Of a stretch of DNA of 64,000 nucleotides, positions 4,047 through 60,045 are shown piece after piece. The stretch is taken from contig NIVC01000051.1 in the NCBI GenBank assembly GCA_002269645.1, positions 124,001 to 188,000 on the forward strand, given 5' to 3'. Position 1 is the stretch's first letter. Every line of letters starts with the position of its first letter. The notes beneath the pieces were generated by a model, which was not told the DNA's origin, did not search any database, and worked only from the letters and a program-made list of their open reading frames with translations. Source of the stretch: Macrostomum lignano (lineage: Eukaryota). The translations under genes were made by a program, and so were the position numbers.

Positions 4047-4121
4047 TTTTAGTGATGTTCTCACACTAAAAGCATTCCTAACCTGCTTTTTCAGCTCCAG
4101 CGTACCCAAGCAGCCTAAGCC

Positions 4122-8640: not shown

Positions 8641-8938
8641 TTGCGTTAGCAAGATTTCTGTCTGTGACTATTAAAAACAAAATTTTGTAGATTCCTCCGT
8701 AGAATTTATTAAACATACATTTTTACACTTTTCGTCTACTATTAGTAGGATGACGTAGCCGTGTGCTTCTTTAATAAATTATTCTATTGTGGCAAAATAT
8801 TTTAATAAATCGTAGGCATTATAGCAACTATACTATACTTATTATTAGTCCTATAATTAGAAACCTATTTATTACATTTCATTTCAAATATACTGTTTTT
8901 TCAACTATTTTCTCTATTTACAAATAATTAATCTACAT

Positions 8939-10874: not shown

Positions 10875-10950
<76 letters not shown>

Positions 10951-11395
10951 GTGTCTGCCTGTCTGTCTGTCTGTCTGTCTGTCTGTGTGTCTTTCTGTCT
11001 GTCCGTTGTCTGTCTGTCTGTCTGTCTGTCCGTCCGTCTTTAGTGTCTTAGTATCACTGGCACTGCACTAACCTGACTCTCCTCGTAGGATCCCGCTGCC
11101 GAGCTCCAGTTGAATCTGATTTTATTCACATTAAATGCCAGAGCGATGCCCCTGGCCGATACGAAGTCCACTGTTGGATACAGGAGTGCCGTGCCGTTCT
11201 CAACCAGCGGATATGTTGGCTGCGTGAGGGCCCGGTGAAAAGGGCTGGAGCGCTCTGCGGTGCAGTGTGAGGGGCGAAATTGCGATCAGGGTGTGTATTG
11301 ATTTGCTGACAGGTTTTCTAGATACATCTTAATGGATGAATGCCAACAGATAGTCCGAAAGGCATGCACAAAGACAGAAAGTCAGACAGACAGTC

Positions 11396-11428
<33 letters not shown>

Positions 11429-11553
11429 GTCAGACAGACAGACAGACGGACAGACAGACAAACAGACAGTCAGACAGACAGACAGACAGACAGATAGACA
11501 AACAGACAGACAGTCAGACAGACAGACAGATAGACAGACAGACAGACAGACAC

Positions 11554-11640
<87 letters not shown>

Positions 11641-11864
11641 GTCAGACAGACAGACAGACACGCAGCTCGGCGCCACTCACTGGGCCTGCAGCGGTTGGCC
11701 TTGTGCGGCTTCCTAGACATGATAAACTGCATCCAGTCGAACACCCCAGACAGAGTCGATCTGTCCAGCCAGACGTTCAAGCCGCTGGTCTCTGGCGTGT
11801 TGGCCAGCAGCAGCAGTGCCACAGTCGGCAGAAATGTTGCCAGCATCGTTGATGAGGCTGGCAT
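8939..11864 (-). CDS. Secreted WIF-domain protein; exons 11864-11681, 11254-11073, 10681-10576, 10493-10350, last exon from 9333 (frame and end uncertain)
   Basis: Signal peptide [21 protein letters not shown], then GLNVWLD...YPLVENG...[16 protein letters not shown]...[30 protein letters not shown]...[18 protein letters not shown]...HFKKAC. This follows the WIF fold pattern of WIF1/RYK (LYLWID, NFTW, YYEF.L.S, P.vNiP..G.VP, FPC, FFKTC); all introns are phase-consistent GT-AG. Confidence 0.75.
9351..10190. repeat. 20-bp minisatellite (gagactattggatttggtca) with 40-bp dimeric variant at left end
   Basis: Direct reading; lies in last intron of WIF-domain gene. Confidence 0.95.
10845..11038. repeat. 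(TCTG)n microsatellite
   Basis: Direct reading. Confidence 0.95.
11370..11660. repeat. (CAGA)n microsatellite
   Basis: Direct reading. Confidence 0.95.
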
Positions 11865-12437
11865 AACCTTGATATATACGGTACGTTTCTTCAGCGGTGA
11901 AGAATTAGAAGAGTTCGGTGTTTCGCTCTTAGCCAGCAGAAGCGGGCCACATTAACATATGCGTCTGGTCTTCAGTTCGTACAATTTATACTCGTATGCA
12001 TAAATTTCGACCTAAAACGACGAGGCAGCGTTTTCTAATTGGACGCACAAATAAAATGAGACGGAGACTCTCCATACTTAATTCGCGTGGGGGGAGGCAG
12101 GAGCCAAGAGGGCGAGAAACGCAAGAGATATAGGGGGGAGAGAGACTGGGGCGGCCACAATAGGCAATTCCAGAGCAAAGCGGAAGGTGTAGGTGGAGCT
12201 CATTAGTTTTATAGCTAATGCCACAGGCTGGTCGAGTAACCAGCTTTCTTAGAACGATAAAAGAAAATGCAAGCTCAACCCCAGCATGCAAAATTGTTCA
12301 GCAAAATGTACTGATGCGCCCACTGTCAGTCATTGGTGCCACAAGAACTGCAAACTGCGAACGCCTACGCAAATATGCACAAAATGTGATTCAGTGCACC
12401 CAGTGCCATGTCAGGCCTCTTGTGTGAGCAACATGTA

Positions 12438-12918
12438 TGTCAACACTGCTCCCAGCTTGCTGTCAACACTGCTCCCAGCTTGCTGTCAACACTGCTCCCA
12501 GCTTGCTGTCAACACTGCTCCCAGCTTGCTGTCAACACTGCTCCCAGCTTGCTGTCAACACTGCTCCCAGCTTGCTGTCAACACTGCTCCCAGCTTGCTG
12601 TCAACACTGCTCCCAGCTTGCTGTCAACACTGCTCCCAGCTTGCTGTCAACACTGCTCCCAGCTTGCTGTCAACACTGCTCCCAGCTTGCTGTCAACACT
12701 GCTCCCAGCTTGCTGTCAACACTGCTCCCAGCTTGCTGTCAACACTGCTCCCAGCTTGCTGTCAACACTGCTCCCAGCTTGCTGTCAACACTGCTCCCAG
12801 CTTGCTGTCAACACTGCTCCCAGCTTGCTGTCAACACTGCTCCCAGCTTGCTGTCAACACTGCTCCCAGCTTGCTGTCAACACTGCTCCCAGCTTGCGTC
12901 AACACTGCTCCCAGCTTG
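12438..12918. repeat. 23-bp near-perfect minisatellite (gtcaacactgctcccagcttgct)
   Basis: About 20 copies. Confidence 0.95.
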
Positions 12919-12939
12919 CGGTCATCATCACTGGCCTAC

Positions 12940-13400
12940 TGTCTCACTACTCTCAGCACTGTCTCACTACTCTCAGCACTGTCTCACTACTCTCATCACT
13001 GTCTCACTACTCTCATCACTGTCTAACTACTCTCATCAGTTTCTCACTACTCTCATCACTGCCTCTCTACTCTCATCACTGTCTCACTACTCTCATCACT
13101 GTCTCCCTACTCTCATCACTGTGTCTCACTACTCTCATCACTGTCTCCCTACTCTCATCACTGTCTCACTACTCTCATCACTGTCTCCCTACTCTCATCA
13201 CTGTGTCTCACTACTCTCATCACTTCTCCACTCTCTACTCTCACCAGGTCTCTACTCTCTACTTTCACCACGTTCTCTACTCTCTTCACGCGGTCTCTAT
13301 ACTCTACTCTCATCGTACCGACCTGCTGTCTCCTTACTCTCTTCACGGTCTCTACTCTCATCACAGTTTCTACTCTACTCTCATCACGCGGTCTCTACTA
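12940..13400. repeat. 20-bp minisatellite (ctgtctcactactctcatca), decaying rightwards
   Basis: Direct reading. Confidence 0.85.
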
Positions 13401-14074
13401 CACTAGCTGTCTCAACTCTCATGACTGTCCTATATACTGCCTCCCCTAGTGCAGTGGCGTACAAGACCGTTAAGACAAAGTACAGTAATAAATACGCTAT
13501 TTACTACTTTGTTTCACGCGTGACAGAGCACTTTAGTTCAGCCGTGCAGTCAAGCACACCTCTTTTTCTGCTTTAAGCAGACACCTTAAAACCTAAGCTA
13601 GCCATGAATATTCTAATAATCCAATACTGCATTGCTGTGCGAGAATTTTGCATTGTCAGCTAAAATAAGTGAAATTTACAGATAGATTGTCGAAAACACT
13701 TCAATGTAAAAGCACGTGTTTTTTCAGCGCTGCATTCCTTTCTTGAGCTTTGCTTTGCGTCCAGTTGAACTGCATGTACATGCATAAAAGATAAGGATAC
13801 ACTTTGAAAGGCGCGCTTGAAGGCGCTACACCTACATTGTGTACTCGTATAATAAAGCTTATTCAAGTGAATGACAAGCAATCTGTATGTCATAAAAAAT
13901 CTAGTGTCGAGCTAATCGCAAATGGTGAATCAACTATTTAAATTATACATGTAATTAGAGGCACATATACTTGTTACACTACTGCAACTTTGATAGTAGC
14001 ATCAAACGAGGCCGACTAAAAATAAGTTAAAACATGACGGCGTAGCTAATAAAGATGACTGGCGTCAGACAACT

Positions 14075-14490
14075 ACCCCCTTCTCTAGTCCAAAAAGCAA
14101 CCACCCCACTCCCTAGTCCAATAAACTACCACCCCACTCCCTAGTCCAATAAGTAACCAGCTCACTCTCTAGTTCAATAAACAACCACCCCACTTCCTAG
14201 TCCAATAAATAACCACCCCACTCCCCAGTCCAATAAGCAACCAACTCACTCTCTAGTTCAAAAAGCAACTACCTCACTCCCTAGTCTAATAAGCAACTAC
14301 CCCACTCCCTAGTCCAATAAGCAACCACCTCACTCCCTAGTCCAATAAATAACCACCCCACTCCCTAGTCCAATAAATAACCACCCCACTCCCTAGTCTA
14401 ATAAGCAACTACCCCACTCCCTAGTCCAATAAATAACCACCCCACTCCCTAGTCCAATAAATAACCACCCCACTCCCCAGTCCAATAAGC
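14075..14490. repeat. 28-bp minisatellite (accaccccactccctagtccaataaata)
   Basis: About 14 copies. Confidence 0.9.
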
Positions 14491-14973
14491 AATCGGTGCA
14501 CTCAATAGCCCAGATAAAAACAAAGGCAAAAAAAAACGTCTGAATTTTACATCAGCAGCGCACTGTGCACCGTGTCTATTTTACATAATTTCTCATTTCT
14601 TCGTGTTTTCTAACTGAAAGAAATATTCGTTGCAACAAAACTTTAAAGCGACCACAGACGAAGTACATCTAGGTTATATTCGTACAGAAAACAAAATAGG
14701 AATCTGCTTAGATCCAGCTGATAAAAACTGAGATTAAAGGAAGACAAAAGTAGATTAATTTGCAAACAAGTTTTCGAATAATTCATTATGACTCCATTAC
14801 ATCTATCAGACAAACATATACTAATAAGCGAGTGCTTAAAATCTTTTTTGGAAGTGATGAGGCTATATAACCTAATATTATATTTTGGATGTAGATTTGA
14901 ATGTATTGATTTTCAAAAAATCCCAAATCCCGAAAAACGTGACAACATCTTCCTACGAATGGTTGAACTAAAT

Positions 14974-16862: not shown

Positions 16863-19731
16863 TTACATAGACAGCATGCACTCTAGTGGTAATCTGTTCT
16901 CTGCTCCAGTTCGATTGAGAATCTCCGACCAAGCGGCTCGGACTTTATCAGCTTTTCTGGCGTAGCCGTGGCTGGCGATGAGGCCAGGGAAGCTGGGACT
17001 GTCTGGGTAAACCGGACTGAAGCTGTGAATTCGTTCAGCGTGCAACGGCACAATGCGCAGCTTGTGCATCAGGATGCCCAGGAAGACGTCATCGAAGCGG
17101 AGGTACCTGACAATGAAATTCAATTCACAGCTTCTTTCACCTTATAAAACTGTTCTGTCCTGCGCCCCCTCCCTCCTCTCTTCCGCCATTCCCTCCTCTC
17201 TTCCACCCCTTCCCTTCTCTTTTCTGGCCCCTCCCTCCTCTATTCCGCCCTTCCCTCCTCTCTTCCGCCCCTTCCCTTCTCTTTTCTGGCCCCTCCCTCC
17301 TCTATTCCGCCCTTCCCTCCTCTCTTCCGCCCCTTCCCTTCTCTTTTCTGGCCCCTCCCTCCTCTCTTCCGCCATTCCCTCCTCTCTTCCGCCCCTTCCC
17401 TCCTCTCTTCCGCCCTTACCTCCTCTCTTCCGCCCCTTCCCTTCTCTTTTCTGGCCCCTCCCTCCTCTATTCCGCCCCTTTCCTCTTCTCTTCCGCCCCC
17501 TCCCTCCTTTCTTCCGCCCCGTCCCTCCTCTCTTCCGCCCCTTCCCTTCTCTCCTCCGGCCCCTCCCTCCTCTATTCCGCCCCTTTCCTCTTCTCTTCCG
17601 CCCCCTCCCTCCTTTCTTCCGCCCCGTCCCTCCTCTCTTCCGCCCCTCCCTCCTCTCTTCCGCCCTTCCCTCCTCTCTTCCGCCCCTTCTCTCCTCTCTT
17701 CCGCCCTTCTCTCCTCTCTTCCGCCCCTTCCCTTCTCTCCTCCGGCCCCTCCCTCCTCTCTTCCGCCCCTCCCTTTTCTCTTCCGCCCCTTCCCTCCTCT
17801 CATCCTTTCGCTCCTTCCCTCCTCTCTTCGGCCCCTTCCCTCCTCTCTTCCGCCCTTTTCCCTCATCTCTTCCACTACTTATTTTCTTCTATTAGTATTT
17901 GTGTTAATTAACCAGCAACTTGGCTAACAGCAAAGCAACGCAGCAGACTCCCTACCTAGTATATTCCATAGCGATAGTGAAGTCCTTAATAACCGGCATA
18001 GACACCAGAAACGCGCCGGCAGACACGTAAGCCGGATACATTGGCCAGGGATATTCTCGATAGGATATCAACCAGCGGCTCTGCGGATTGCGCTTGGGCG
18101 CCCGACGAACCGGGGCCGCATTGCGCCAGACAAAACCGGCCATTGTGCCTGCGTAGGACTCGGGCGGAATGGCATCGGCAAACCGGACCAAATTCAACGG
18201 GTTGACAACGTAGTCGTCGTCCAAGAAGAAGGCGAATCTGCGCGAGTGAGGTAACCATTTTTATCTACTTGGGATTGTCGCGGCGATTCGAACTTCAGGG
18301 GCCATTGGGATTCGAATGATTTTGTGGATGGGTCATTGGGATTCGAATGCTTTTGTGGATGGGTTATTGGGATTCGAATGTTTTTGGGGATGGGTCATTG
18401 GGATTCGAATGATTTTGTGGATGGGTCATTGGGATTCGAATGTTTTTGTGGATGGGTCATTGGGATTCGAATGTTTTTGTGGATGGGTCATTGGGATTCG
18501 AATGATTTTGTGGATGGGTCAATGGGATTCGAATGATTTTGTGGATGGGTCATTGGGATTCGAATGCTTTTGTGGATGGGTCATTGGGATTCGAATGATT
18601 TTGTGGATGGGTCATTGGGATTCGAATGATTTTGTGGATGGGTCATTGGGATTCGAATGCTTTTGTGGATGGGTTTTTGGGATTTGAATGTTTTTGTGGA
18701 TGGCTCAATGGGATTCGAATGTTTTTGTGGATGGGTCATTGGGATTCGAATGCTTTTGTGGATGGGTCATTGGGATTCGAATGATTTTGTGGATGGGTCA
18801 TTGGGATTCGAATGATTTTGTGGATGGGTTATTGGGATTCGAATGATAAAACAGACTGACAGGTACTCCCAAAGGTGTCTCACCTCGCACCCTGACAATG
18901 AGCAATCATCCAGCTGAAACTGGACATCATCTTCAGCGTATTATTAAAATAATGATCGACAAAGTCTGCTTGCACTATGTCGCCATATTTAGCCACTTCT
19001 TTAGCCAATTTTTCGGCATACTCCGAAGATTTTGGATCGGCAGATTTCGGCTGGCCAACCATGAATACTCGACGGACTTTATTTACGGAACTGGATGATG
19101 ATGATGATGATGAGGAAGACGATGAAGAAGAAGCTGAGCCAGCAGTTGGCCAGCAATCAAAGTTGCCCCAAGTTTCCCTGATTAATTGTCGTTGATCGAA
19201 ATGACTGAGAGCTGATTTAATCACCAGCACTATTGCAGGTTGCTGCTGCTGCTGCTGCTTCTGCTGACTCCTTCCAGTGAGCTTATACGGTTTGCACAGA
19301 TCGGCCTGATTAATAGGAAATTGAAAATTATGCCGATTTATTGGCGCCACATTCACTGACAGATTGTGGCGCACCCGGCTAACTAGTTGAACCATGTCAA
19401 CTAGCAACGGATATTTGAAGTCTTCGCTGCCAATATGAACCGACTCGGATGACGTGTCGTTAGCCACTTTTAAGAACACGTTGTACTCTGGTAGAGCCAT
19501 AATAGCGTCAAGAGGATTTGGTTTAGTCGGGCCGGGCTTTGGCTTAGCCGTATTAGCGAATGTGAAATAGCTGATTAATATAGTGCTGTGAATGCACAAG
19601 ATGATGAATACGACTAGAAAGGCTGGATTTTTAACCACCTCGCAGCAGATTTCGCCGCACACATAGAAACAGGAGCCGCAATGGTGCAGCGGTGCGCATA
19701 AGCAGCGGAGTGCGCGTCTGAATGGCAGCAT
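16863..19731 (-). CDS. Beta-1,3-galactosyltransferase family (GT31, brainiac/B3GALT-like); exons 19731-18884, 18237-17956, 17106-16863 (457 aa)
   Basis: N-terminal TM (AFLVVFIILCIHSTILISYF), LVIKSA..HFDQRQLIRETWG, YGDIVQADFVDHYFNNTLKM, FFLDDDYVVN, YPAYVSAGAFLVS, FDDVFLG motifs; phase-2 introns consistent; total 1374 nt. Confidence 0.92.
17165..17870. repeat. CT-rich ~21-bp minisatellite (cctcctctcttccgccccttc)
   Basis: Intron of GT31 gene. Confidence 0.85.
18300..18846. repeat. 31-bp minisatellite (gggtcattgggattcgaatgattttgtggat)
   Basis: About 17 copies in intron of GT31 gene. Confidence 0.93.
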
Positions 19732-22051: not shown

Positions 22052-22711
22052 CTAGTCCTGTCGAGCCTTATTAAAGAACTCGTCGTCCAACATTCCAGAC
22101 CGAGCCTGCTGCGGCTGCTGCTGCTGGTCAGAATCTGAGCTTTTCAATCCACTTCTATCGTCTTCATAGTAACTACTGCTGAACGGTTTCTGGTACTGTT
22201 CGCTGAATGAGCCGTAGCTGTAGTCCGGCTTAACATAGATTGGGTCTTTCTTCGGCTGCTGCTGCTGCTGAGAAGGCGGCGGCGCTAGAGGCAGATCAGA
22301 CAAATCCTGAATCGAGCGTTGATTATCCAGAGATATGTCTCGCTTTGGCCATTGCTGCTGCTGCGGATGTTGTTGTTGCTTCTGCTGCTGCTGTTGCAGA
22401 GGCTGCTTCTTCATCAGCATTGTCTTAACAGCGCTCTGCTCCTCATCTGTGTCCATAAATTTCCGTCTACAAACGCCCAGGTAGGACACCCTGCCTAGGA
22501 TATTGCCAGCCACAATTGAGCCCAGATATCGTAGGGCTATGAATTTTTGGTAATGACCCAGGCGATGACGCCAGAAGGTCACCAGGGTCAGGGCGGCGCT
22601 AAATGGTAAACAGCGCCTGTAGAAACTCTCTTGCTGACATTGGCGCAGCAGCTCCCGATCTAGATCGGTCAGGGCCAATTCGCCCGACTGATTAGCGCCT
22701 GGAAAAGCCAT
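22052..22711 (-). CDS. OCIAD1: OCIA domain-containing protein (asrij/OCIAD1-like), single exon
   Basis: LTDLDRELLRQCQQESFYRRCLPFS...RYLGSIVAGNILGRVSYLGVCRRKF matches the OCIA domain pattern (C..ESF..R..P; G...GK.SY...C..KF); Q-rich tail. Confidence 0.85.
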   Translation of the reverse strand: MAFPGANQSGELALTDLDRELLRQCQQESFYRRCLPFSAALTLVTFWRHRLGHYQKFIALRYLGSIVAGNILGRVSYLGVCRRKFMDTDEEQSAVKTMLMKKQPLQQQQQKQQQHPQQQQWPKRDISLDNQRSIQDLSDLPLAPPPSQQQQQPKKDPIYVKPDYSYGSFSEQYQKPFSSSYYEDDRSGLKSSDSDQQQQPQQARSGMLDDEFFNKARQD

Positions 22712-22857
22712 CAATTTGCAATTTGTTTTTTGGATTAAAACTACTTAATGAAAGTAGTATAGTTGCGCTAAATTTGAAATAGCTAGTCAGAATAGTCTAA
22801 AGTTTGGAAACACTATATTTAACATCTTTAGATTATAGGTTTTTGACTGAATTCACG

Positions 22858-26545: not shown

Positions 26546-27299
26546 TGGGAAATGAGAAATTGAAGCTCAAAAAACAAGCAGCTCACAAGCAACAGCTCCC
26601 TTAAACTGACACCCCCTTAAACTCTGTTTGCTCAAACTTTTGGCCATAGACACATTGCCAATTGATGTCATTTGACTCGGTGGTACGAACTCAAATGTTA
26701 AAATAATTTACCAAACGGAAGTGTAGGATTGCCTCATGTCCCTAGTAATAATTAAAGAAAATAGGCCTAATGTTAATAGTATCACTATCAAATATTCATT
26801 TTTAATCCAGTACACTAATTATGAACCACAGATACTACATAATATCTGTGTTATATAGTATCTGTGTTATGAACTTAATTAAAATTGTATTAAATATTTA
26901 AAACTAACGTTTTTATAGTTTTTTATCTTTAGGTGGCCTAGGCTATTATATTAGCAATTTTTATCTTCAGTAAGCCCTAAAATCTATTCAACGTTAGGCC
27001 TACTTTAACTTACTAAGCCGACTTTTTAAGTAATTTTAATTCCAGCTAGATATAGCAATAGCCCTTATGTGGACGCCAACAAAGAATGTGAATCTGAATA
27101 AATAAACTAAAGAAAAGTTCCTGAAATTTAAAGTTCTGTATTTTATATTACGTAGTTAGTAAAATTTGAGAATTTGAGCTTCAATCTGTAAGAAATAGGA
27201 ATGATTTTTTTGGAGTTTGTAATTATACGAACGTATCTGTTTCCCCATAGATATTCGTATTGATATTCAATTTCTAACAAATGCAACAAAATAAACCTA

Positions 27300-28510
27300 C
27301 TTGTACAGCTCGGATTTGCTTGAAAATTTACAGAAAAATTATTACACACAAAACAAACACCTCTGTGAAACTTCAAGTCCATCAGACCACGCAAAGCGGA
27401 ATGGCAAGGGTTTTAAAGGTGCTCGTATTTATAATGCATTGTATATGCGCACAGTGTATAACATGTATGCTCATTTGCAACACTTGTACAGCTCGGATTT
27501 GCATGAAAATTTACAGAAAAATTATTACACACAAAACAAACACCTCTGTGAAACTTCAAGTCCATCAGACCACGCAAAGCGGAATGGCAAGAGTTTTAAA
27601 GGTGCTCGTATTTATAATGCATTGTATATGCGCACAGTGTATAACATGTATGCTCATTTGCAACACTTGTACAGCTCGGATTTGCATGAAAATTTACAGA
27701 AAAATTATTACACACAAAACAAACATCTTTGTGAAACTTCAAGTCCATCAGACCACGCAAAGCGGAATGGCAAGAGTTTTAAAGGTGCTCGTATTTATAA
27801 TGCATTGTATATGCGCACAGTGTATAACATGTATGCTCATTTGCAACACTTGTACAGCTCGGATTTGCTTGAAAATTTACAGAAAAATTATTACACACAA
27901 AACAAACATCTTTGTGAAACTTCAAGTCCATCAGACCACGCAAAGCGGAATGGCAAGAGTTTTAAAGGTGCTCGTATTTATAATGCATTGTATATGCGCA
28001 CAGTGTATAACATGTATGCCCATTTGCAACACTTGTACAGCTCGGATTTGCATGAAAATTTACAGAAAAATTATTACACACAAAACAAACACCTCTGTGA
28101 AACTTCAAGTCCATCAGACCACGCAAAGCGGAATGGCAAGAGTTTTAAAGGTGCTCGTATTTATAATGCATTGTATATGCGCACAGTGTATAACATGTAT
28201 GCCCATTTGCAACACTTGTACAGCTCGGATTTGCTTGAAAATTTACAGAAAAATTATTACACACAAAACAAACACCTCTGTGAAACTTCAAGTCCATCAG
28301 ACCACGCAAAGCGGAATGGCAAGAGTTTTAAAGGTGCTCGTATTTATAATGCATTGTATATGCGCACAGTGTATAACATGTATGCTCATTTGCAACACTT
28401 GTACAGCTCGGATTTGCTTGAAAATTTACAGAAAAATTATTACACACAAAACAAACACCTCTGTGAAACTTCAAGTCCATCAGACCACGCAAAGCGGAAT
28501 GGCAAGAGTT
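27300..28510 (+). repeat. Left arm: 183-bp tandem unit, ~6.6 copies
   Basis: gtacagctcggatttgc at 27303, 27486, 27669, 27852, 28035, 28218, 28401. Confidence 0.95.
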
Positions 28511-29921
28511 TTTTTAAGGTGCTCGTATATCGTATATTTATATGATGCACATATAGCTTGCTAGCTCGTAAGCGCGATGCAACGCGAAGTGCAATACCTG
28601 CATATAGGCCCGTATATTATACATGTTACATGTACCCAGCTCATGCATGCGTGACTGCGAATTATGTCGGCACTGTTTTGGTGAGTATTCCACTCACGTT
28701 GCAAATGTAAAATTCAATTAGCAGAATGTAATTTTCATTGCTATTAATGCAAATAGCTATTGTCCACAAACATTTCTGTTGTTAACCCTATACCAATTCA
28801 GTCTCTGATCGTAGCTGCGTAATAAGTCATAAGTCTGAATTACTAACGCGAGCCAAATATTGCATGTACATGTATAAGCCAGCCCTGTGAAGCGCAGGTG
28901 CCAATTGTAGACTCCTCTTGGCTTGGCACGCAAGCCTAGCACAAAAATAACGCAACATTTGGCCTAATTTCTACACCACTCTATGCAACCGTTGGGATAT
29001 GCAGCTTGGGTTAAAAATACAAACTTGTTTCGAAATTTTCAAAGTGACAGTCGCTGAGAACTTTTGATGTATTTAGTATTACATGTTACGTACATGTGCA
29101 TATATGTATATGCACGCGTGGTACTTCTAATAACATCAATAAAAGCGTGGACAGTTTTGATGAAATGCATGTAACCAATAAAAAGGTTATAACAGGAATT
29201 TAAATTACAACAAAGATGAATACTTAAATAGATTTACATACAAAATGTACTGAACAGTTCGGCTCATAATCGCTCTATACCAACCATTAGATCGAGCATG
29301 TGTTCCCTAATAATATTACTCTTAGTAGTCATCACGCTGTTGTCAAGCTCTCGATTAAATCGGAGCCACAAAGATCCACTGTGGCGAGAGGTCCTACTTT
29401 TAGTGTAGAAGAGGCCCGATTGAAAACCCTGAGAAGTCCCATGAAAGTTGCAAACTGAACTATTTAAATGAGCGCTGCTCCACTCTCTGAAAGAATATCG
29501 AACACCTGCATGGGCCGCGGTTAGAGCCCCCTGTTTTGTTCGAGTGGGAATGGTTGTTCGCCTGTTCATGTCCATGTCGGTCGATCCCCAATTCGAGTGG
29601 TCCTTAGCATAAATTGATTATATTGCATTCCATGGCTCGTAATCGAACATCTGCATAGGGGGATGAAAAAAGCGGGCGAACAAACAAAAACAACGGGATG
29701 GGAGGGCGGCCATACATATTTTTCTAGTCAGAAAATTAGCAGCAAAAAGCAGCAGCCTCACGACCCTTCTGTACATGGAAGATTGGCCGTCGCGACTGCC
29801 ACAGGTGCACTCAGAACCAGATCTAGAGAACCTCTTGCTCCAAAAATAAGGAACTGGAGAGATCCATTTACGAGTAATGGCGACATTCACGTACATGTAC
29901 AGTTGTGTAAAAATCAAGTAA

Positions 29922-32542
29922 CTAATGCGAAAACATGTCTTTGCACGTTGCGCAACAAAAACCTGGATCGGTCGACCCTTCGACGCATTCTGTGTGATAC
30001 CAACGAAGACAGGAGGGACATTCAATCTAGAAATGAAGGGGTGAGCGAAAATTAACCGCATTATGCTGTAAGCACAACTCGACTGCATATTCGATCGACT
30101 GCATCTTAAGCTGGAGTTCAATCTGTATGACTGCTTTAAGCAATCTGCTTGGCAAAAGTGAAATTCGTAGTTAAAAAAATAAAAAAAGGAAAATTACTCG
30201 TATTTTACCCAATTTATGCGACGACTAACGCCCGAAGCGTCAGGTTCTGTGTTGCTACAGGCTGAGCACTCTTCCTGCGTTCCTCCATAGCTGTAGGCCT
30301 GGATCACATTCCAGATATACTGTCTGTATCTTCCGAGAGCCGTCGGATTGTTCTTGAACCGGAGACCAGAACCAAGAGCTAATGCCCTAGCGTACAGGCA
30401 TACAAACACTCCGCAACTATGACCATCAGATTGCATTGTTCTCGACATTGTGGCCAGCTCATATGGCTTCGATGTGCTGCTGGTGAATACCGGAGCGCTT
30501 TGGTCAACAAATGCCATTATTCCATCGGAAGCCAATATGCGGCTAGAAAGTTAACAGAAATTTTACAGATTTGCCACATCAGTACTTAAGTTCACTTTTA
30601 TTTATTCTCTGGACATGTACACAAACTATTGTACTCACTTCCATTTGCGAATTAGAACATGAAACTCTTGCTTCTCTTGCGCATTACGCCGAATCGAATC
30701 CAGCACAAAGACCTTTCGTTCAACGCCGCAAATAACGATCAAGTAAAAATGCCCGCTGTTTAAAATAGGCACGATTATTTGATTCAGGCCCTGCAACATC
30801 AAGAGAGCAAATAATTTTATACCTCAAATTGGTGCATGCGTAAGATTTTCATTGAGAATTCACTACAAGTGTACAAATTTATTTTGCATCAAAAACGACA
30901 TTATTGTTTCATTAACAGAACTTGCCTTCCATCCGAGAGTTCTTCTCAGCAAGTTCTGGACTCCATCGTTGAACTCATCTCCTGATAGATTCAATATGTA
31001 GTAAAAGTCGCCCTCACTTATTACAATCCTTTGGGCGTTGTTCGATGTGATAGCAGTGCAATAGGCCAATAAAATCTATCGCGAGTAATGCAAGAGGGAC
31101 AGGAAAAGATAATGGTGAAAATAGGTCATAAGTCAACTGAATTTTCTATTGTAAGTATTTACGTATACTTACTTAAGTATTTATTGTAAGTAAGTAAGTA
31201 TTTATGAAAATACTTACCGTGTAGTCTAACAGGTTGCTTCCCAACAAACTTTGACGATGCTCTTGCGTTACGGGAATATCCGTTCCAGAGCCAGGAAGGG
31301 TGAAGAGAATCTGGCTATTATCGCTTTGCACCGTTCTTCCTTTCTGCCGCGTGCTCCTCTTGCTTTGCCACCTGCTTCTACTGTTATCTGCGGTTCCATT
31401 TTGACTGGAATTTTTATTGGGTCTGTTCCTACCAGCTGTGCATCCCGGAAGTTTTGATTTTGGGTTGCTCTGTTGGGACTGACTGCTACTCTTTTCCGTT
31501 TCGTCAGGATCGGCGACATTAGCAAAATACTGATTGCTACTAGTATCTGAGTATCTTGAACGCTTGCTATTTCTCGACCTTTTTTGCCAACCTTCAGTTG
31601 CAGCTTCTTCTGAGATTGATGACTTCCTTTTTCTGCAAAAACTTGGAGCAGGTACTTTGCTCGAGATGGTGCACTCTGAAACTCTACGAAGTACAAAGGG
31701 TACATAATTCTCTACGAAGGTACTCAGCCTGGACTTGGTGTTAAATCGACTTTTCACAGAAGAAAACCAACTCTCCACATGAGCATTTGAGTAAAAAGAC
31801 TTTGAATTTTTAGCAATCAAATGATTCCATGTAAATATAGCCCATAGAGGGAGGATGGACAGGTATCTAAGCAAGAAAAAGTTTATCAATCGAGGGTTGT
31901 AGAATTCATTATCTGTCAGATGCGAATGACCGGTTTTATGCGCGAGAGTATTTTGAATTGTGGTAAATTCCTTTTTAAAGTATTCGTAGTATGGAGAATT
32001 TTTCAGTATCGCGTCACCTTCCGCGTTCATACTTGCATGATCCTTGTCTTGAAGTATAAATGAGTCTTTGTTGATTGATTCGGAATACTCTGGAACATGG
32101 CCATCTCTCAGAAAATTTGCTACCCTAGTTCTAGCAGCAACGGTTTGCTCGGCATACGGAGATCCAAATATAATAAGCGTGTCCATGATGAAGTTGACGG
32201 ATAGTTTTTGCGTACTGGAATACTGAATTAAAGAAAATAACTTCAAAAATAGCTGACGGCTTCGCTGGTTCAAGGAGTGTTTTTTGCAGTGGTCCGAAAT
32301 TGACTTTATAATATGATTGCTACACAGAAAAACGCCATATTGAATCTCGCTAGGGGTGTCCGTAATAAAGTAATTGTAATGAATTTGGATGTACGTTGTC
32401 ACGTCCGTGTGGTGGAAGTCTAAGCATGAATGAATTTGCGCCCATGAAAAGTCGGAAATAAAAAGAATATTTAGGTCAACAGAAAAAGGTGAGTTTACAC
32501 AGTGCAGAATTCTATGGCGGAGGAGTTTTAGAAAGTGAGAAT
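29922..32542 (-). CDS. MULE/NOF-type transposase (C-terminal half) fused to Ulp1/C48 SUMO protease and PHD finger; exons ~32542-31218, 31075-30926, 30790-30639, 30542-30209, 30026-29922; N-terminus not found
   Basis: ISDFSWAQIHS (2nd Asp), LCSNH (CxxH), LPLW...SNAHVESWFSSVK (Glu). Protease: NLLDYT|ILLAY, IVPILNSGHFYL, VLDS, QSDGHSCGVF (His/Asp/Cys triad). PHD: CSAC...INW|IECPSCLRWYHTEC...FCCATC. Splice phases all consistent (one GC donor). Confidence 0.82.
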
Positions 32543-32549
32543 CTATTAC

Positions 32550-33290
32550 AGACACGAAAGCAGAGAGGAGAGACAAAGGGAGAGAGAGAAGTGGAGTGAG
32601 GAAAGAGGAGAAAAGATGGGAGAGAATCGAGAGCAAAAGGGAGAGAGGGGAAAGGGAGAGACAGGGGAGAGGAGAGGAAAGAGAAGAACGGAGAGGGGAG
32701 AGAATATAGTAAGGAGATGAGAGATGGGAGAGCAGAGAACAGAGAGATGAGTGGAGAGATAAGAGCGAGGGAGAGAGAGATGGAGAGGAGAGGTGAGAGT
32801 AGTGGAGGAAGTTGAGAGAGGAGAGATGATAAAAGGAGACTACAGATCAGATAATGAGAGAGAGTATGAGGCAGGAAAGATATATTACAGAGGATTGAGA
32901 CGAGAGAGGAGAGAGTAAAGAGATGATAGAAGAGATGAGAGACGAGAGCAGATCGGGGGAGAGTAGAGAGAAGAGATCGGAGAGAGGAGAGAAGTGGGAA
33001 GTGTCAAGAAAGAGGGGAGAGTGAGGAGTGAGAATTTATACAGAGGGGAGAGAGAATAGAGAGTAGAGAGCAGAGATAAATAAGAAGAGATAAGAGAGCA
33101 GAAAATAAGAAGAGAAAGGAGAGATGATAAAGCAATGAGAGAGAAGAGAGTAGAAAAACCAAAGAAAGATAAGGAGAGACAAGAAAAGATCGGGGAGAGG
33201 GAAGAAATAAAGGAGAGAGGAAAAAAGAGATGAGATGAGATGGGAGGGAAAGGATGAGAGACGATAGAGAAGAGAGGAAACAGTAGAGAA
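32550..33290. repeat. GA-rich low-complexity tract inside the transposon
   Basis: Direct reading; CT-rich on the sense strand just upstream of the transposase exon acceptor. Confidence 0.8.
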
Positions 33291-33569
33291 TTGACTGAAG
33301 TTTCAAAGGAATCTAGGGACGTAGGGAGGCGCAGGGACAGAGGCCGGAGTTTGCCAATACTTGTTTTAAGACAGACATTGCCTGACATTCTTGGGCAACA
33401 CCACAAGCCAACATGTGATTAATGCTTGCCTCAAATTCTAATTTTATACGAACTTATACTCCACTTTTATTTTTAACTCTATCCTATAATTATTAACAAG
33501 TTCTGTGTTTGAGTATAACTTCATATTCTGGAACACAAGCAAAAGTAGTTCCGGCTGGGATTGGAATTC

Positions 33570-34447
33570 ATATACAATGCATTATAAATACGAGCACCTT
33601 TAAAACCCTTGCCATTCCGCTTTGCGTGGTCTGATGGACTTGAAGTTTCACAAAGATGTTTGTTTTGTGTGTAATAATTTTTCTGTAAATTTTCATGCAA
33701 ATCCGAGCTGTACAAGTGTTGCAAATGGGCATACATGTTATACACTGTGCGCATATACAATGCATTATAAATACGAGCACCTTTAAAACTCTTGCCATTC
33801 CGCTTTGCGTGGTCTGATGGACTTGAAGTTTCACAAAGATGTTTGTTTTGTGTGTAATAATTTTTCTGTAAATTTTCATGCAAATCCGAGCTGTACAAGT
33901 GTTGCAAATGGGCATACATGTTATACACTGTGCGCATATACAATGCATTATAAATACGAGCACCTTTAAAACCCTTGCCATTCCGCTTTGCGTGGTCTGA
34001 TGGACTTGAAGTTTCACAGAGGTGTTTGTTTTGTGTGTAATAATTTTTCTGTAAATTTTCATGCAAATCCGAGCTGTACAAGTGTTGCAAATGGGCATAC
34101 ATGTTATACACTGTGCGCATATACAATGCATTATAAATACGAGCACCTTTAAAACTCTTGCCATTCCGCTTTGCGTGGTCTGATGGACTTGAAGTTTCAC
34201 AGAGGTGTTTGTTTTGTGTGTAATAATTTTTCTGTAAATTTTCATGCAAATCCGAGCTGTACAAGTGTTGCAAATGGGCATACATGTTATACACTGTGCG
34301 CATATACAATGCATTATAAATACGAGCACCTTTAAAACTCTTGCCATTCCGCTTTGCGTGGTCTGATGGACTTGAAGTTTCACAGAGGTTTTTGTTTTGT
34401 GTGTAATAATTTTTCTGTAAATTTTCATGCAAATCCGAGCTGTACAA
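33570..34447 (-). repeat. Right arm: 183-bp tandem unit inverted, ~4.8 copies
   Basis: ccgagctgtac at 33713, 33896, 34079, 34262, 34445. Confidence 0.95.
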
Positions 34448-36780
34448 GTAGGTTTATTTTGTTGCATTTGTTAGAAATTGAATATCAATACGAATATCTA
34501 TGGGGAAACAGATACGTATTATACGATGCCAAATGAATTCGTCTTTTGACACACTTTGCATTCGTGCCAATGTTTTTTCCTTTGGGACAGAAAATTTCTG
34601 CTAACAAATTTTTAAAGCTGAATATGGCGTCAGAGTAAGGAATGTAACCCGAAACATGTATTCATTTTTTGTTTGAATTATCTGTTCGAAGGAAAAAATA
34701 TCTTTCGGGAGATTCATATCTGTCGGGGAACCCGGGCATGTAAGAATGTCAATGTTTTTTTAATTTTTTTGGATGCACAAAGACGACGAAAGTTCTCTTT
34801 ATATATACTCGTATTTCAAATCTTTTCGATGTTAAATGTGCCACTACGTTTCTGAAAAAAACACCAGAACTTATACGAGGTAATAACATATTATATTAGC
34901 GAATCAAATTAGTGAATATTTGAAAATAAAACTCTGGTCATTCAAATCATTATATTTTAAGTCCCTAGTTCTTAATAGTACTATGCTACCTGCTTCATTT
35001 TTAACAAAGGCGGGAAGGATTACCTAAACCAATCACAATAATTCTCTAGAAGAGAAAAACTATAACTAAACTGACACTTATTGTAATATCACTATTGTAT
35101 TGTATTTTAATATTTGATCTAAATTTAATAAATTTCAAGACAACTATGCGACAAGGAAGCGTGATTTTTTGCCTGAATCTACTTAAGTTGTCCACCAGTC
35201 CACGATGCACGATACTTAAACGTGTGCTGCGCAACAAAACTTTGTTACAATTTTATTGAATAATTAGTTAATGAATACTAATAGAAATCAATTATTTGAT
35301 TACCATCTAACTACGACATTATTGCATCTAAAAACGTTTGAAGTTTAGAATTGCTTTTCAGCTACAAAATTGTACTGCATGCTACTATACAGTGTAGTGG
35401 TACAGATCCAACTCCCCAGTGAGGGGGGCAGATCCAAATGGAGGTGGAGGGATCGAAGCACAGATCTGATTTTTGCAAAAATTGGCTGCCACGCGCTTGG
35501 TCCACGAGACAATTAAACTTTTCTGTGTAGCCCTCCTTCCGGTGCAGTGTTTTGCGCCCTTTGCTGCAACAGCTGTACGAGGGAATGTGTATTGAATAGC
35601 ATATAACCTGCTTCGAGTATAATTAATTGTATACAGGTATTCGTTCTTCGAACTGCTAATTATAATGAAAATTGGTTTGTCTGGGTTGAAGTATAGTTTA
35701 CTTTTGGTAAGGAAAATATTTGTGCGCATACATGTATAGTACTCATGGACCGAAAAACGGCAACAAAAATCAACATCAAAATAAAATTATCTACACCGGT
35801 ATAAGCACAAAAGCAAGCCATGCAGTAAACCTTTTAGCCAATTGGACCATGCAAGACTCTTTCACATGCATGCATGCGTAGCCATTTAATTGCACCTATG
35901 TACGCATGTTGTACAGCAATTGGAGAGCGGTAGAGCGATAGAGTTACTACATGTATACCGCGCAATCTAATAGGAATATATCTGCAGATGTGCAGAGTAC
36001 ATTATGTACATGTACATGTACATTGTACAAGAATCCCCACGATTCATAATGTGTACTATATTATATGTATGCACAATCAAAATCCTACGAGTATATCGAC
36101 AAGCCACATGCAGGAATATAACATCGAAACGAGAATTTTTCAAAACCGAGGGCCAATGCACTTTTTGACAATTATACTAATGTCAGCTGAATTAACACTG
36201 AATAAAATCCTATTGCTTATTTAATTGGGGTTTAATGGGCGCCTTCGCAGCAAGGAACCAATAGTCTATGGTACAATTACTACTTCTATGCCGGGACCAA
36301 AATCAACAGAAAAATTGTCTATGGTACAATTATTGGGGCTTCGCCCGCCTCGAGACCATTAAATGCAGCCTCGGACATTCTGACCATAGAATGCTTATTA
36401 AATTGCTAGTATCATATACGTATTGTTGAGCCTGCTCTAGATAACGCATAGCTGCGCTGAATAGGATTTTGCCATAGACAAATTCTGTAGAATAATGCGT
36501 GCTAAAAAATATGTTTTCTCCACAGATTCGATTTTATAACTACGAGTACATGTATATGTTGCCATAGACGGGCCACTTCCAGCCGCCTGGCGAAAGCCCC
36601 GGGGTTAAGACCATAGACGGTATAGCTTCTGCTGCTCTCAAGCATTAGCATTAGCAGCTGCAGCTGCAGCTATATAGTGTCTGTGGCCCTAAAAACCTGG
36701 CCAGGGTTTTCCCTCTGCGGCCAGACGGCGGCTAAACACTCGTACATCAGCCAATGCTGTAGTGACACACCCCCAATCTA

Positions 36781-37751: not shown

Positions 37752-38959
37752 CCAATCTAGGTAGAATATATAATTTGTGTCTAGAAATGCATACTAAATG
37801 CACTATAGCGACGAGATGATGAATATGGCCTTCTTTACTGTCCTTCATCGTCCTTCTCTACTTCAGCTGTCCATATGGTACAATAATCGATTATTGATTA
37901 TTCAACCCTTGGGCAATAAAACCTGCACCCTGACTGCGATCCCGGCAACGCCCCTAAATTATATATACATGTAAATGTACACATGCTATTACTGCTAATC
38001 TAAAAGTTCAAGGTATTATATTCTCTGATAGTCTCGCTTTTAAAGTAAAATGTTTAAAAGTAAAAAAAACTGGCTTTAGCCGTTAATTAGTCTCGCAATT
38101 AAGGCGGTATTAGGATAAATATTATTGGCAGCTAAAAAACACTTAAATCCTTCTAGGATACCTGCAAATGTTATTTGGATATAAAGCTAGACTAGTCCTA
38201 ATTTTAGGATCGGAGATAAGCTATTATAGATTACTTGTTTTTGTCTGGCCGTCAATTCCTTCTCTTAGTACGAAATTTTAAAAAGACGCTAGTAATATAG
38301 CGTCTCTTTGCTACCTAAATGAAGTCTTGAGTTAACTTTCTCAATTAGAAACTCAAGTAATTAGACAGGCTTGAACAAATTCAAGCAGTTGGGGACGAAA
38401 CCCGACTCACGCTCACACAGGGTGCACACAGCGGCCCAGACTTTTGATATGGCCTCAATGGACAATTGGTTAGATGCCAAAGTCTCAAATAAGTTGACTA
38501 AATGGCTGCTGATATCTGAAACTGGAAATTGCTTTATTGCTTTAAAAATTAACGGTCAGAGCATTTTATTCTTAGGTTTGTTACCCTTTCAATTCGAATG
38601 ACTCAATCAACTATTGACATACAGAAAAATCCATGCTCTAGAACCTGGCTCGGCCCCCCGTCTGTGGGAGATCATTTACATATATACATAATATAGAAGT
38701 TCTCTAAAGGTCAACTGGCTGAATTTCAAAGTCAGAATTATAAAAAGCGTATGTAAATCCTGGATGATTGGATTAATTAAATAGGAGGAGCGGTAGGGAA
38801 CTAAGCTATATAAGCTAGGCAAGAGGTTTAGTCCCGAATAGTGTAGCAACCAAAATTGAGCAATTCAAGATTCTTCTCCTACATTTTCGTTTCCTGTCTA
38901 TATTTTTTAATTATCTTATTAGTCTTAGGAATCGTTCTTTGTTAGTCTGAAAGTGTGCT

Positions 38960-39663
38960 TAGACTGTGCCTGAAAACTGTGTGAAAGTGTGCCTGAACTG
39001 TGCCTGAAAACTGTGTGAAAGTGTGCTTGAACTGTACCTGAAAACTGTGTGAAAGTGTGCCTGAACTGTGCCTGAAAACTGTGTGAAAGTGTGCCTGAAC
39101 TGTGCCTGAAAACTGTGTGAAAGTGTTCTTGAACTGTGCCTGAAAACTGTGTGAAAGTGTGCCTGAACTGTGCCTGAAAACTGTGTGAAAGTGTGCTTGA
39201 ACTGTGCCTGAAAACTGTGTGAAAGTGTGCCTGAACTGTACCTGAAAACTGTGTGAAAGTGTGCCTGAACTGTGCCTGAAAACTGTGTGAAAGTGTGCTT
39301 GAACTGTGCCTGAAAACTGTGTGAAAGTGTGCCTGAAAACTGTGTGAAAGTGTGCTTGAACTGTACCTGAAAACTGTGTGAAAGTGTGCTTGAACTGTGC
39401 CTGAAAACTGTGTGAAAGTGTGCCTGAACTGTACCTGAAAACTGTGTGAAAGTGTGCCTGAACTGTGCCTGAAAACTGTGTGAAAGTGTGCTTGAACTGT
39501 GCCTGAAAACTGTGTGAAAGTGTGCCTGAAAACTGTGTGAAAGTGTGCCTGAAAACTGTGTGAAAGTGTGCTTGAACTGTACCTGAAAACTGTGTAAACT
39601 GTGTGAAAGTGAGCTTGAACTGTGCCTGAAAACTGTGTGAAAGTGTGCTTGAACTGTACCTGA
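38960..39663. repeat. 34-bp minisatellite (ctgtgcctgaaaactgtgtgaaagtgtgcctgaa) with 22-bp deletion variants
   Basis: Direct reading. Confidence 0.93.

Positions 39664-40646: not shown

Positions 40647-49792
<9,146 letters not shown>

Positions 49793-59544: not shown

Positions 59545-60045
<501 letters not shown>

What the first reader, a model, noticed from the sequence alone, without database searches (positions are those of the whole stretch)
27222..34526. Young 7.3-kb Foldback/NOF-like transposon with arms made of inverted 183-bp tandem arrays
Seen: perfect 9-bp TSD, identical termini, asymmetric arms (~6.6 versus ~4.8 units of a near-identical 183-bp monomer) and a ~5-kb core with a spliced MULE-type gene. 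Known: Drosophila FB-NOF has tandem-array inverted arms and a 9-bp TSD, and NOF is classed with MULEs. Inference: a recently mobile FB-NOF-like family in a non-insect lineage that uses long tandem units as its arms, and a potential seed for satellite DNA.
Basis: partly seen in the sequence, partly recalled or inferred. Interest (0 to 1): 0.85.

Follow-up and report, generated by a model that had tools for sequence, protein, structure and literature searches.

The report
Defective Rehavkus foldback transposon copy
The 7.3-kb feature is a real, young-looking cut-and-paste DNA transposon whose inverted ends are built from 183-bp tandem repeats, but it belongs to the already described Rehavkus group (Mutator-related) with this same design, and this copy has lost the front half of its transposase gene.

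Summary
The element spans 27231-34517 (7,287 bp) and is flanked by a perfect 9-bp duplication, ATTATACGA. Its 68-bp termini are identical. The inverted arms hold 6.7 and 4.8 copies of a 183-bp monomer around a 5.0-kb core.

The core gene lies on the minus strand and has four GT-AG introns. It encodes a DDE transposase fused to a Ulp1-type protease and a PHD finger. A profile built from its homologues matches all six published Rehavkus reference DDE domains (E 5e-80 to 1e-29; hhalign probability 100%). It matches canonical Mutator domains only distantly (hhalign 92.7%; Pfam MULE not met).

Rehavkus is already described with a 9-bp duplication, a PHD finger and satellite monomers in its inverted termini. 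Rehavkus-1_TC of Tribolium carries five and eight copies of a 164-bp unit, and such repeats have expanded into satellites.

This copy is defective. Everything upstream of profile position 201, including the first catalytic Asp, is absent from the window and replaced by GA-rich filler. It can move only with transposase supplied in trans.

Homology to NOF, genome-wide copy number and the host lineage could not be tested. I rate it a new member of a known kind, of modest interest.

The parts
27222..27230 (.). Left copy of the 9-bp target-site duplication, ATTATACGA
   Evidence: Identical to 34518-34526.
27231..27298 (+). Left unique 68-bp terminus (5'-ACGTATCTGTTTCCCC...)
   Evidence: 100% identical to the reverse complement of 34450-34517. 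It occurs nowhere else in the window.
27299..28531 (+). Left arm: 6.7 copies of the 183-bp monomer. It lies on the 3' side of the gene, and its inner end is at monomer position ~134.
   Evidence: TRF gives period 183 and 98% matches.
28532..29921 (-). Non-coding interior downstream of the stop codon (3' UTR or unknown), 1.4 kb
   Evidence: No family-profile or Pfam match. No internal repeats.
29922..30026 (-). Exon 5: second half of the PHD finger (IECPSCLRWYHTECV...CCATC) plus the stop codon
   Evidence: Acceptor AG at 30027-30028, phase 0. Pfam PHD covers 1-47/47 with E=0.024 and a complete C4HC3 pattern.
30209..30542 (-). Exon 4: Ulp1 catalytic Cys (HSCGV, codon 30415-30413) and the first half of the PHD finger
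   Evidence: Gene model. Peptidase_C48 scores E=9e-9 on the spliced product.
30639..30790 (-). Exon 3: Ulp1 catalytic His (30751-30749) and Asp (30700-30698)
   Evidence: This exon alone scores Pfam PF02902 E=3e-4.
30875..31075 (-). Exon 2: N-terminal part of the Ulp1 protease domain
   Evidence: GT-AG introns on both sides, phase 0.
31218..32540 (-). Truncated exon 1: the Rehavkus-type DDE transposase from just before the second Asp to the basic linker. It holds D2 (FISDFSW, 32453-32451), the C..H motif (32324-32313) and the catalytic E (HVESWF, 31775-31773).
   Evidence: Family HMM positions 201-547 of 666, E=2e-86. There are 269 homologues. phmmer to Rehavkus-1_TC gives E=8.5e-10.
32562..33179 (.). 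GA-rich low-complexity block at the truncation point of the transposase gene (filler or microsatellite)
   Evidence: TRF rows. Homology to every family member stops at ~32540.
33180..33568 (.). Unique interior segment between the filler and the right arm, with no recognisable coding content
   Evidence: No tblastn or HMM match to the N-terminal regions of homologues.
33569..34449 (-). Right arm: 4.8 copies of the 183-bp monomer, inverted. Its inner end is at monomer position 149.
   Evidence: TRF gives period 183 and 99% matches. Inverted-repeat pairs I1-I11. Junction.
34450..34517 (-). Right unique 68-bp terminus
   Evidence: Identical to the left terminus.
34518..34526 (.). Right copy of the 9-bp target-site duplication, ATTATACGA

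Best explanation
This is one insertion of a Rehavkus-group DNA transposon. Rehavkus is the sister group of Mutator-like elements within the MULE superfamily in the broad sense. The insertion has foldback-type ends: a 68-bp unique terminus followed by an array of 183-bp monomers on each side.

Shown:
- The element's boundaries, the 9-bp duplication and the arm structure.
- The family identity of the encoded protein.
- A correctly spliced DDE transposase + Ulp1 protease + PHD finger gene.
- The loss of all coding sequence upstream of the second catalytic Asp.

Inferred from what is established for DDE transposases and for this family:
- A full-length Rehavkus transposase binds the termini, and probably reiterated sites in the monomers. 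It excises the element and inserts it at a 9-bp staggered cut, and repair of that cut produced ATTATACGA on both sides.
- This copy lacks the N-terminal DNA-binding region and the first catalytic Asp, so it cannot make active transposase. Either it was mobilised in trans by an autonomous relative, or it lost its 5' gene half after landing here, for example by abortive gap repair that left GA-rich filler.
- Unequal exchange or replication slippage within the arrays explains the 6.7 versus 4.8 copies and the shuffled monomer variants. Such arrays can later expand into satellites.
- The Ulp1 and PHD modules plausibly act on chromatin or SUMO to favour transposition. This last point is speculation.
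For: Structure:
- TSD, termini and arrays.

Gene:
- Five exons and four GT-AG introns give a 704-codon open product.
- Peptidase_C48 scores E=9e-9, and a full-length C4HC3 PHD match is present.

Family:
- 269 homologues carry the conserved motifs DATG / VTDFSW / C..H / N..VENWF.
- Relatives have the same core + Ulp1 + PHD layout (P0001, P0019) or an OTU protease instead.
- The family HMM hits the six Repbase Rehavkus DDE domains taken from the PMC6446971 supplement at E = 4.7e-80 to 1.3e-29. The window protein itself hits Rehavkus-1_TC at 8.5e-10.
- hhalign to the Rehavkus alignment gives 100% probability and E=9e-55; hhalign to canonical MULEs gives 92.7%.
- An AF2 model of a family member (pLDDT 74) has an RNase-H-like beta-beta-beta-alpha-beta core and an all-alpha insertion. 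Its best PDB hit is the Hermes transposase, at E=8e-3.
- The C-terminal domain of another member superposes on yeast Ulp1, TM 0.72.

Related element:
- A sponge relative (Oopsacas minuta, L005 7085-14537) has a complete D-D-E reading frame, ~400-bp TIRs and a perfect 9-bp TSD.

Truncation:
- tblastn and six-frame HMM searches find nothing for HMM positions 1-200 anywhere in the window.

Literature:
- Rehavkus features.
- Satellite monomers in Rehavkus termini and their expansion.
Against: - Only one copy could be examined. Mobility of the family in this genome, an autonomous partner and empty sites were not shown.
- The window protein's direct similarity to the Rehavkus references is only 22-24% identity over ~240 residues. 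Family placement therefore rests mainly on the profile.
- Pfam PHD is below its gathering score.
- The fold match to Hermes is weak.
- Binding of transposase to the 183-bp monomers is untested. The terminus and the monomer share no significant motif.
- Near-identity of the arms could partly reflect gene conversion between them rather than youth.
Confidence: 0.85

Rival explanations
1. Composite of the FB-NOF kind. On this reading the 183-bp foldback arms are an independent non-autonomous foldback element, and a fragment of a separate Rehavkus-type element was nested or captured between them. Arms and gene would then not belong to one ancestral element.
For: The inner junctions of the two arms are asymmetric (monomer positions ~134 and 149) and lead into unrelated unique sequence. 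GA-rich filler and 0.4 kb of unassignable sequence lie next to the right arm. Capture of foreign DNA between FB4 arms is documented in Drosophila (PMC8277862).
Against: The core shows no internal TIRs, no nested duplication and no repeats. In Tribolium, Rehavkus-1_TC itself carries satellite monomers in its own inverted termini, in unequal numbers. The 9-bp duplication is the size expected for the encoded transposase family.
Confidence: 0.08
2. An autonomous, currently active element whose gene encodes a working transposase.
For: The remaining 704 codons are open, the splice sites are intact, the termini are identical and the duplication is perfect.
Against: The homologous region begins at family-profile position 201. 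The DATG motif with the first catalytic Asp (position 153) and the ~500-residue N-terminal region of full-length relatives are absent from the whole window. No in-frame ATG precedes the conserved region, and low-complexity sequence abuts it.
Confidence: 0.03
3. Not a transposon insertion at all, but a local inverted duplication of a satellite array around unrelated sequence, with a chance 9-bp match at the edges.
For: The window is unusually rich in tandem repeats, including blocks in inverted orientation.
Against: The repeat has unique 68-bp termini that end exactly at a perfect 9-bp direct repeat. The interior encodes a transposase of a family with 9-bp duplications. The monomer occurs nowhere else in the window.
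Confidence: 0.02

Closest known systems
Rehavkus-1_TC and Rehavkus-3_TC (Tribolium castaneum; Repbase, Kapitonov, Gentles & Jurka 2006)
   Same: Both have a 9-bp target-site duplication and a DDE domain of the same family; these are the best direct hits of the window protein. Both have a PHD finger. Both have inverted termini that hold a small and unequal number of satellite-sized monomers: TCsat23 is 164 bp, in five and eight copies.
   Different: The monomer and terminal sequences are unrelated, and the monomer here is 183 bp. The window copy is 7.3 kb and internally deleted, whereas the references are 9.5 and 18.5 kb. Whether the Tribolium proteins carry the Ulp1 domain was not checked. The host of the window is unknown.
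Drosophila FB / FB-NOF (FB4)
   Same: Both have foldback architecture with arms made of tandem repeats and of variable, asymmetric length. Both have a 9-10-bp duplication. Both have an optional protein-coding middle.
   Different: From my own knowledge, FB arms are built of short units that grow inward (10/20/31 bp up to ~155 bp), not a uniform 183-bp monomer after a unique terminus. FB4's transposase is regarded as unknown, and Repbase even labelled it Tc1/Mariner. Homology of the window protein to NOF was not testable here. The class label 'MULE-NOF' exists, but its equivalence with Rehavkus is only my recollection.
Tetris (Drosophila virilis foldback element)
   Same: Its TIRs have an outer unique domain followed by a variable number of ~220-bp tandem repeats. 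It has an 8-10-bp duplication, its copies are non-autonomous, and it is a documented source of a satellite.
   Different: Tetris has no coding capacity, so its superfamily is only inferred. The window element still carries most of its transposase gene.
Tm1 (Meloidogyne, Mutator/Foldback)
   Same: It is a non-insect foldback-type element with a 9-bp duplication, composite TIRs of variable length and a Mutator-superfamily transposase.
   Different: Tm1 repeats are ~14 bp, and its transposase is Phantom-like with a FLYWCH domain, not Rehavkus.
Plant KI-MULEs (Kaonashi) carrying Ulp1-like protease domains (my own knowledge; mentioned in PMC8277862)
   Same: A Mutator-superfamily element associated with a C48/Ulp1 protease domain.
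   Different: KI-MULEs belong to a different clade (MuDR proper). Their protease is generally viewed as a captured host fragment and is not fused with a PHD finger. They have no satellite arms.

Membership tests
Rehavkus group (MULE superfamily sensu lato) | DDE transposase domain homologous to the Rehavkus reference sequences | tested here: met
   The HMM built from the window protein's homologues hits all six Rehavkus DDE domains from the PMC6446971 supplement (E = 4.7e-80 to 1.3e-29 at Z=1e6, full length). The window protein hits Rehavkus-1_TC by phmmer at 8.5e-10. hhalign gives 100% probability and E=9e-55.
Rehavkus group (MULE superfamily sensu lato) | 9-bp target-site duplication | tested here: met
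   ATTATACGA on both sides. The sponge relative L005 also has a perfect 9-bp TSD. The literature table gives 9 bp.
Rehavkus group (MULE superfamily sensu lato) | Long terminal inverted repeats carrying subterminal tandem (minisatellite or satellite) repeats | tested here: met
   Arms of 1.30 kb and 0.95 kb, with 6.7 and 4.8 copies of a 183-bp unit.
Rehavkus group (MULE superfamily sensu lato) | PHD finger in the transposase | tested here: met
   A complete C4HC3 pattern spans exons 4 and 5. Pfam PHD covers 1-47/47 but scores only E=0.024, below the gathering score. Homologues P0019 (9e-6) and P0025 (6e-7) pass.
Rehavkus group (MULE superfamily sensu lato) | Complete D-D-E catalytic triad (a requirement for an autonomous member, not for membership) | tested here: not met
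   D2, C..H and E are present. D1 (the DATG motif, profile position 153) and everything upstream are absent from the window.
Mutator/MuDR proper (Pfam MULE PF10551) | Match to the MULE transposase domain model | tested here: not met
   No PF10551 hit for the window product at E<=1 or E<=0.1. Only 3 of 86 homologues hit weakly, best 1.2e-4. The family HMM against five canonical MULE DDE domains is not significant.
Mutator/MuDR proper (Pfam MULE PF10551) | Remote profile-profile relationship of the DDE core | tested here: inconclusive
   hhalign of the family alignment against a five-sequence MULE alignment gives probability 92.7% and P=4e-7 over 103 columns, covering only the D1-D2-C..H half.
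Drosophila FB-NOF | Protein homologous to the NOF product | not testable with these tools
   No NOF sequence was available in any accessible collection or paper supplement. Only the Rehavkus-1_DY domain from D. yakuba could be compared (family HMM E=5.6e-44).
Drosophila FB-NOF | Inverted arms made of tandem repeats, with a 9-10-bp duplication | tested here: met
   FB4 properties are in PMC8277862.
Galileo-type foldback elements (P superfamily) | 7-bp duplication and a P/THAP9-type transposase | tested here: not met
   The duplication here is 9 bp, and the transposase is of the Rehavkus family. The 7-bp figure for Galileo comes from my own knowledge.

The most novel reading that the evidence does not exclude
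The copy may belong to a live Rehavkus lineage in an animal outside the arthropods and annelids listed for the group. In that case its nucleosome-sized 183-bp monomer, which oddly keeps two stop-free reading frames, would be spreading by transposition and seeding satellite arrays. The fused Ulp1-PHD module would be a chromatin-directed accessory function of the transposase. That would give a tractable system for watching satellite birth from a transposon with an identifiable transposase.
Probability: 0.15. Interest if true: 0.5.

Novelty: new member of a known kind. Interest (0 to 1): 0.25.

Why it matters
For annotation, the interval should be masked as a non-autonomous Rehavkus/MULE-type DNA transposon, not called as a gene. 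The long reading frames across the arms are artefacts of a 183-bp (61-codon) period.

Biologically, it is one more clean example of satellite-sized monomers living inside the inverted termini of a Rehavkus element. This arrangement has been shown in Tribolium to feed satellite DNA.

The homologue survey adds modestly to what is published. The same transposase family, often fused to Ulp1 or OTU proteases and PHD fingers, is present in a glass sponge and a rotifer. The sponge copy shows TIRs and a 9-bp duplication. The published host list names arthropods and annelids, so the group appears to be spread more widely across animals.

None of this would surprise a transposon specialist.

Tried and rejected
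- Word-indexed protein search with a concatenated product: no hits. A second search with the alignment returned few proteins and no names.
- Looking for related loci in metagenome contigs with P0001, and for the 27-nt terminus: nothing found. Copies with other duplications could therefore not be found.
- Exact-product look-ups of two window reading frames, to locate the source genome: not on record. The host remains unidentified beyond 'animal-like', from OCIA, Galactosyl_T, Na_Ca_ex and GST exons.
- Rfam scan of the window: nothing.
- PDB sequence search with the family profile: only noise.
- The metagenome relative L001-L003: a 186-bp array lies downstream of the gene, but there is no inverted partner and element boundaries could not be defined. 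Its monomer is unrelated to the 183-bp unit.
- The Brachionus locus L004 gave no clear TIRs.
- Idea that the 68-bp terminus is a diverged monomer or shares a binding motif with it: rejected, since 30% of shuffles score as well.
- Idea that the arm reading frames encode something: the Pfam hits are sums of weak repeats with no credible domain.
- Reviews that might state the NOF/Mutator link (PMC2167627, PMC2268567, PMC3093488) are not held.
Full report
**1. Observation**

Tandem Repeats Finder reports a 183-bp array at 27299-28528 (6.7 copies, 98% matches) and another at 33569-34449 (4.8 copies, 99%). The inverted-repeat search shows that the two are reverse complements. The longest in-register pair is 27231-28179 against 33569-34517, which is 949 nt at 99%.

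Reading the ends gives ...GTA ATTATACGA | ACGTATCTGTTTCCCC... on the left. The reverse complement of the same 68-bp terminus, followed by ATTATACGA TGCC..., lies on the right. The element is therefore 27231-34517 (7,287 bp), with a perfect 9-bp target-site duplication at 27222-27230 and 34518-34526.

The 68-bp termini are identical, and a 38-bp terminal probe occurs nowhere else in the window. The 13 mismatches in the 949-nt comparison all fall at the few polymorphic monomer positions (22, 60, 62, 65, 111, 173). Their pattern is shuffled between the arms rather than mirrored. This is what unequal exchange within arrays produces. The arrays end at different monomer positions on their inner sides, ~134 on the left and 149 on the right.

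**2. The core gene**

All coding signal lies on the minus strand. I derived a model with five exons: 32540-31218, 31075-30875, 30790-30639, 30542-30209 and 30026-29922. The four introns are 142, 84, 96 and 182 nt, all GT...AG with compatible phases, and the product is 704 codons ending at a TAG.

The spliced product matches Pfam Peptidase_C48 (Ulp1) at E=9e-9, with His, Asp and Cys in place. It ends in a complete C4HC3 PHD finger, where Pfam PHD covers its full length but scores weakly at E=0.024.

The first 330 residues have no Pfam match. They do have 269 homologues among 1.84 billion representative proteins, the best being P0001 at E=7e-31 and 32% identity. Alignments of these homologues show four conserved motifs: L.(F/L)DATG, VTDFSW, LC..H..K and N..VENWF...K. 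This is the D-D-[C..H]-E layout of a DDE transposase.

Long relatives repeat the same architecture. P0001 and P0019 have the core followed by Ulp1 and PHD; others carry an OTU protease instead. Named members come from the glass sponge Oopsacas minuta and the rotifer Brachionus calyciflorus.

An AlphaFold model of P0046 (mean pLDDT 74) shows the beta-beta-beta-alpha-beta RNase-H-like core with a long all-helical insertion before the catalytic Glu. Its best PDB match is the Hermes hAT transposase, which is weak at E=8e-3 and probability 0.89. The C-terminal domain of P0004 superposes on yeast Ulp1 and human SENPs, with E=6e-8 and target TM 0.72.

**3. Family identity**

The supplement of Dupeyron et al. 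2019 (PMC6446971) contains the DDE domains of six Repbase Rehavkus elements.

- A profile HMM built from the window protein's homologues matches all six over their full length. The E-values at Z=1e6 are: Rehavkus-1_TC 4.7e-80, -3_TC 6.5e-77, -1_HR 2.5e-58, -1_DY 5.6e-44, 1_AP 1.8e-33 and -2_NVi 1.3e-29.
- The window protein alone hits Rehavkus-1_TC at 8.5e-10.
- Profile-profile comparison gives 100% probability (E=9e-55) to the Rehavkus alignment.
- Against five canonical Mutator DDE domains from the same file, profile-profile comparison gives only 92.7% over 103 columns, and HMM-to-sequence scores are not significant.

The gene is therefore Rehavkus-type. It is 'MULE-type' only in the broad sense in which Rehavkus is lumped with Mutator.

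**4. The copy is defective**

Homology to every family member starts at about 32540, a few residues before the second catalytic Asp. tblastn with nine relatives, and a six-frame search of the whole window with the family HMM, find nothing for profile positions 1-200. That missing stretch includes the DATG motif at position 153 and corresponds to about 500 N-terminal residues of P0001.

In their place are a 0.6-kb GA-rich low-complexity block (32562-33179) and 0.4 kb of unassignable sequence. The element therefore cannot encode an active transposase.

The rest of the reading frame and all splice sites are intact, and the duplication and termini are perfect. Both the deletion and the insertion therefore look recent. 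Conversion between the arms could, however, inflate their similarity.

**5. Relatives elsewhere**

In the Oopsacas minuta contig (L005), the family gene sits inside a 7.45-kb element (7085-14537). It has ~345-440-bp TIRs at 97% identity, termini beginning 5'-ACGAG... (the window element begins 5'-ACGTA...) and a perfect 9-bp duplication, CCCAACTTC. An uninterrupted reading frame covers profile positions 93-582 and so includes all three catalytic residues. This independently ties the protein family to 9-bp duplications, and it shows a family member with plain TIRs.

A metagenome relative (L001) has a 186-bp tandem array just downstream of the gene. That array is unrelated in sequence to the 183-bp unit and has no inverted partner.

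**6. Comparison with what is known**

Published descriptions of Rehavkus give a 9-bp duplication, a PHD finger, a minisatellite near the 3' TIR and TIRs of 26-412 bp in insects and a leech. [quoted passage not shown] The foldback element Tetris shows the same logic with 220-bp repeats. Tm1 of root-knot nematodes is a non-insect Mutator/foldback element with 9-bp duplications.

The window element is therefore a new member of a known kind.

The specific link to NOF could not be tested, because I had no NOF sequence. The literature at hand describes FB4 as non-autonomous with an unknown transposase. My recollection that RepeatMasker's 'MULE-NOF' class corresponds to Rehavkus is only a lead.

**7. 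Mechanism**

Shown: the structure, the family, the truncation and the 9-bp duplication.

Inferred from established DDE transposase chemistry and from the family:
- A full-length Rehavkus transposase binds the termini, excises the element and inserts it at a 9-bp staggered cut.
- This copy depends on transposase supplied in trans, or it lost its 5' half in place through abortive gap repair.
- Array length drifts by unequal exchange or slippage.
- Reiterated monomers may add transposase binding sites and raise excision frequency. This is reported for tandem repeats in MULE termini, as cited in the Tribolium preprint.

The role of the Ulp1-PHD module is speculative.

**8. Context and limits**

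The element lies between an OCIA-domain gene (22052-22714, minus strand) and the first exon of a Na/Ca-K exchanger gene (40647-41459, plus strand). These two genes are divergently oriented. The host looks like an animal but was not identified. No other fragment of the element occurs in the window. Public metagenome scans found no copy. Copy number, an autonomous partner, empty sites and Repbase/Dfam identity remain to be checked in the source genome.

**Verdict**

This is a recently inserted, internally deleted Rehavkus-group foldback transposon. I put confidence in that reading at 0.85, rate it a new member of a known kind, and set interest at about 0.25.

Noticed in passing
window 27281-28564, 27301-28545 (+); 33521-34447, 33568-34467 (-): The 183-bp monomer is exactly 61 codons, and all five forward-strand stop triplets fall in one frame. 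Two frames therefore run open through the whole arrays, giving ORFs of 427, 414, 308 and 299 aa. Only 55 of 20,000 shuffles of the monomer give two or more stop-free frames. The Pfam hits to these ORFs are sums of weak repeated matches, not real domains. The cause is unexplained: it may be chance, or the monomer may derive from coding sequence.
   Followed up: partly
window 3584-7255, 9232-10209, 12346-13012, 18175-18969, 38860-39644, 42887-43500, 44674-45600, 54371-55094: The window is exceptionally dense in micro- and minisatellites with units of 8-34 bp. These include a perfect 23-bp array at 12438-12897 and several 21-bp arrays that generate long spurious ORFs.
   Followed up: no
window 48751-49357 and 59531-60052: Two ~500-bp tetranucleotide-type repeat blocks lie in inverted orientation 10 kb apart, at ~72% complementarity. 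This is probably just the same microsatellite on opposite strands.
   Followed up: no
window 22052-22714 (-) and 40647-41459 (+): The transposon sits in the 18-kb interval between an OCIA-domain gene and the first exon of a Na/Ca(-K) exchanger gene, which are divergently oriented. It is 4.5 kb and 6.1 kb from them. This fits the known Mutator-type preference for gene-proximal DNA, but it is a single case.
   Followed up: partly
L005 7085-14537 (Oopsacas minuta, GCA_024704765.1 JAKMXF010000327.1): A Rehavkus-family element in a glass sponge has ~400-bp plain TIRs, a perfect 9-bp duplication (CCCAACTTC) and an open D-D-E reading frame at 9683-11488. It is annotated only as an 'OTU domain-containing protein'. 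This extends the host range beyond the arthropods and annelids listed in PMC6446971.
   Followed up: partly
L001 14208-17143 and L002 8599-11476 (JGI metagenome contigs): A 186-187-bp tandem array of about 15 copies lies 0.6 kb downstream of an intronless 1,212-aa Rehavkus-like gene with Ulp1 and PHD domains. The array is direct only and unrelated in sequence to the 183-bp unit. Satellite-sized arrays next to this gene family therefore recur.
   Followed up: partly
alignment A1 (homologues of the window transposase): One family member matches Pfam PWP3A-B_C, the C-terminal domain of PWWP3A/B (MUM1) DNA-repair factors, at E=1e-19. This could point to a domesticated relative of this transposase family.
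   Followed up: no
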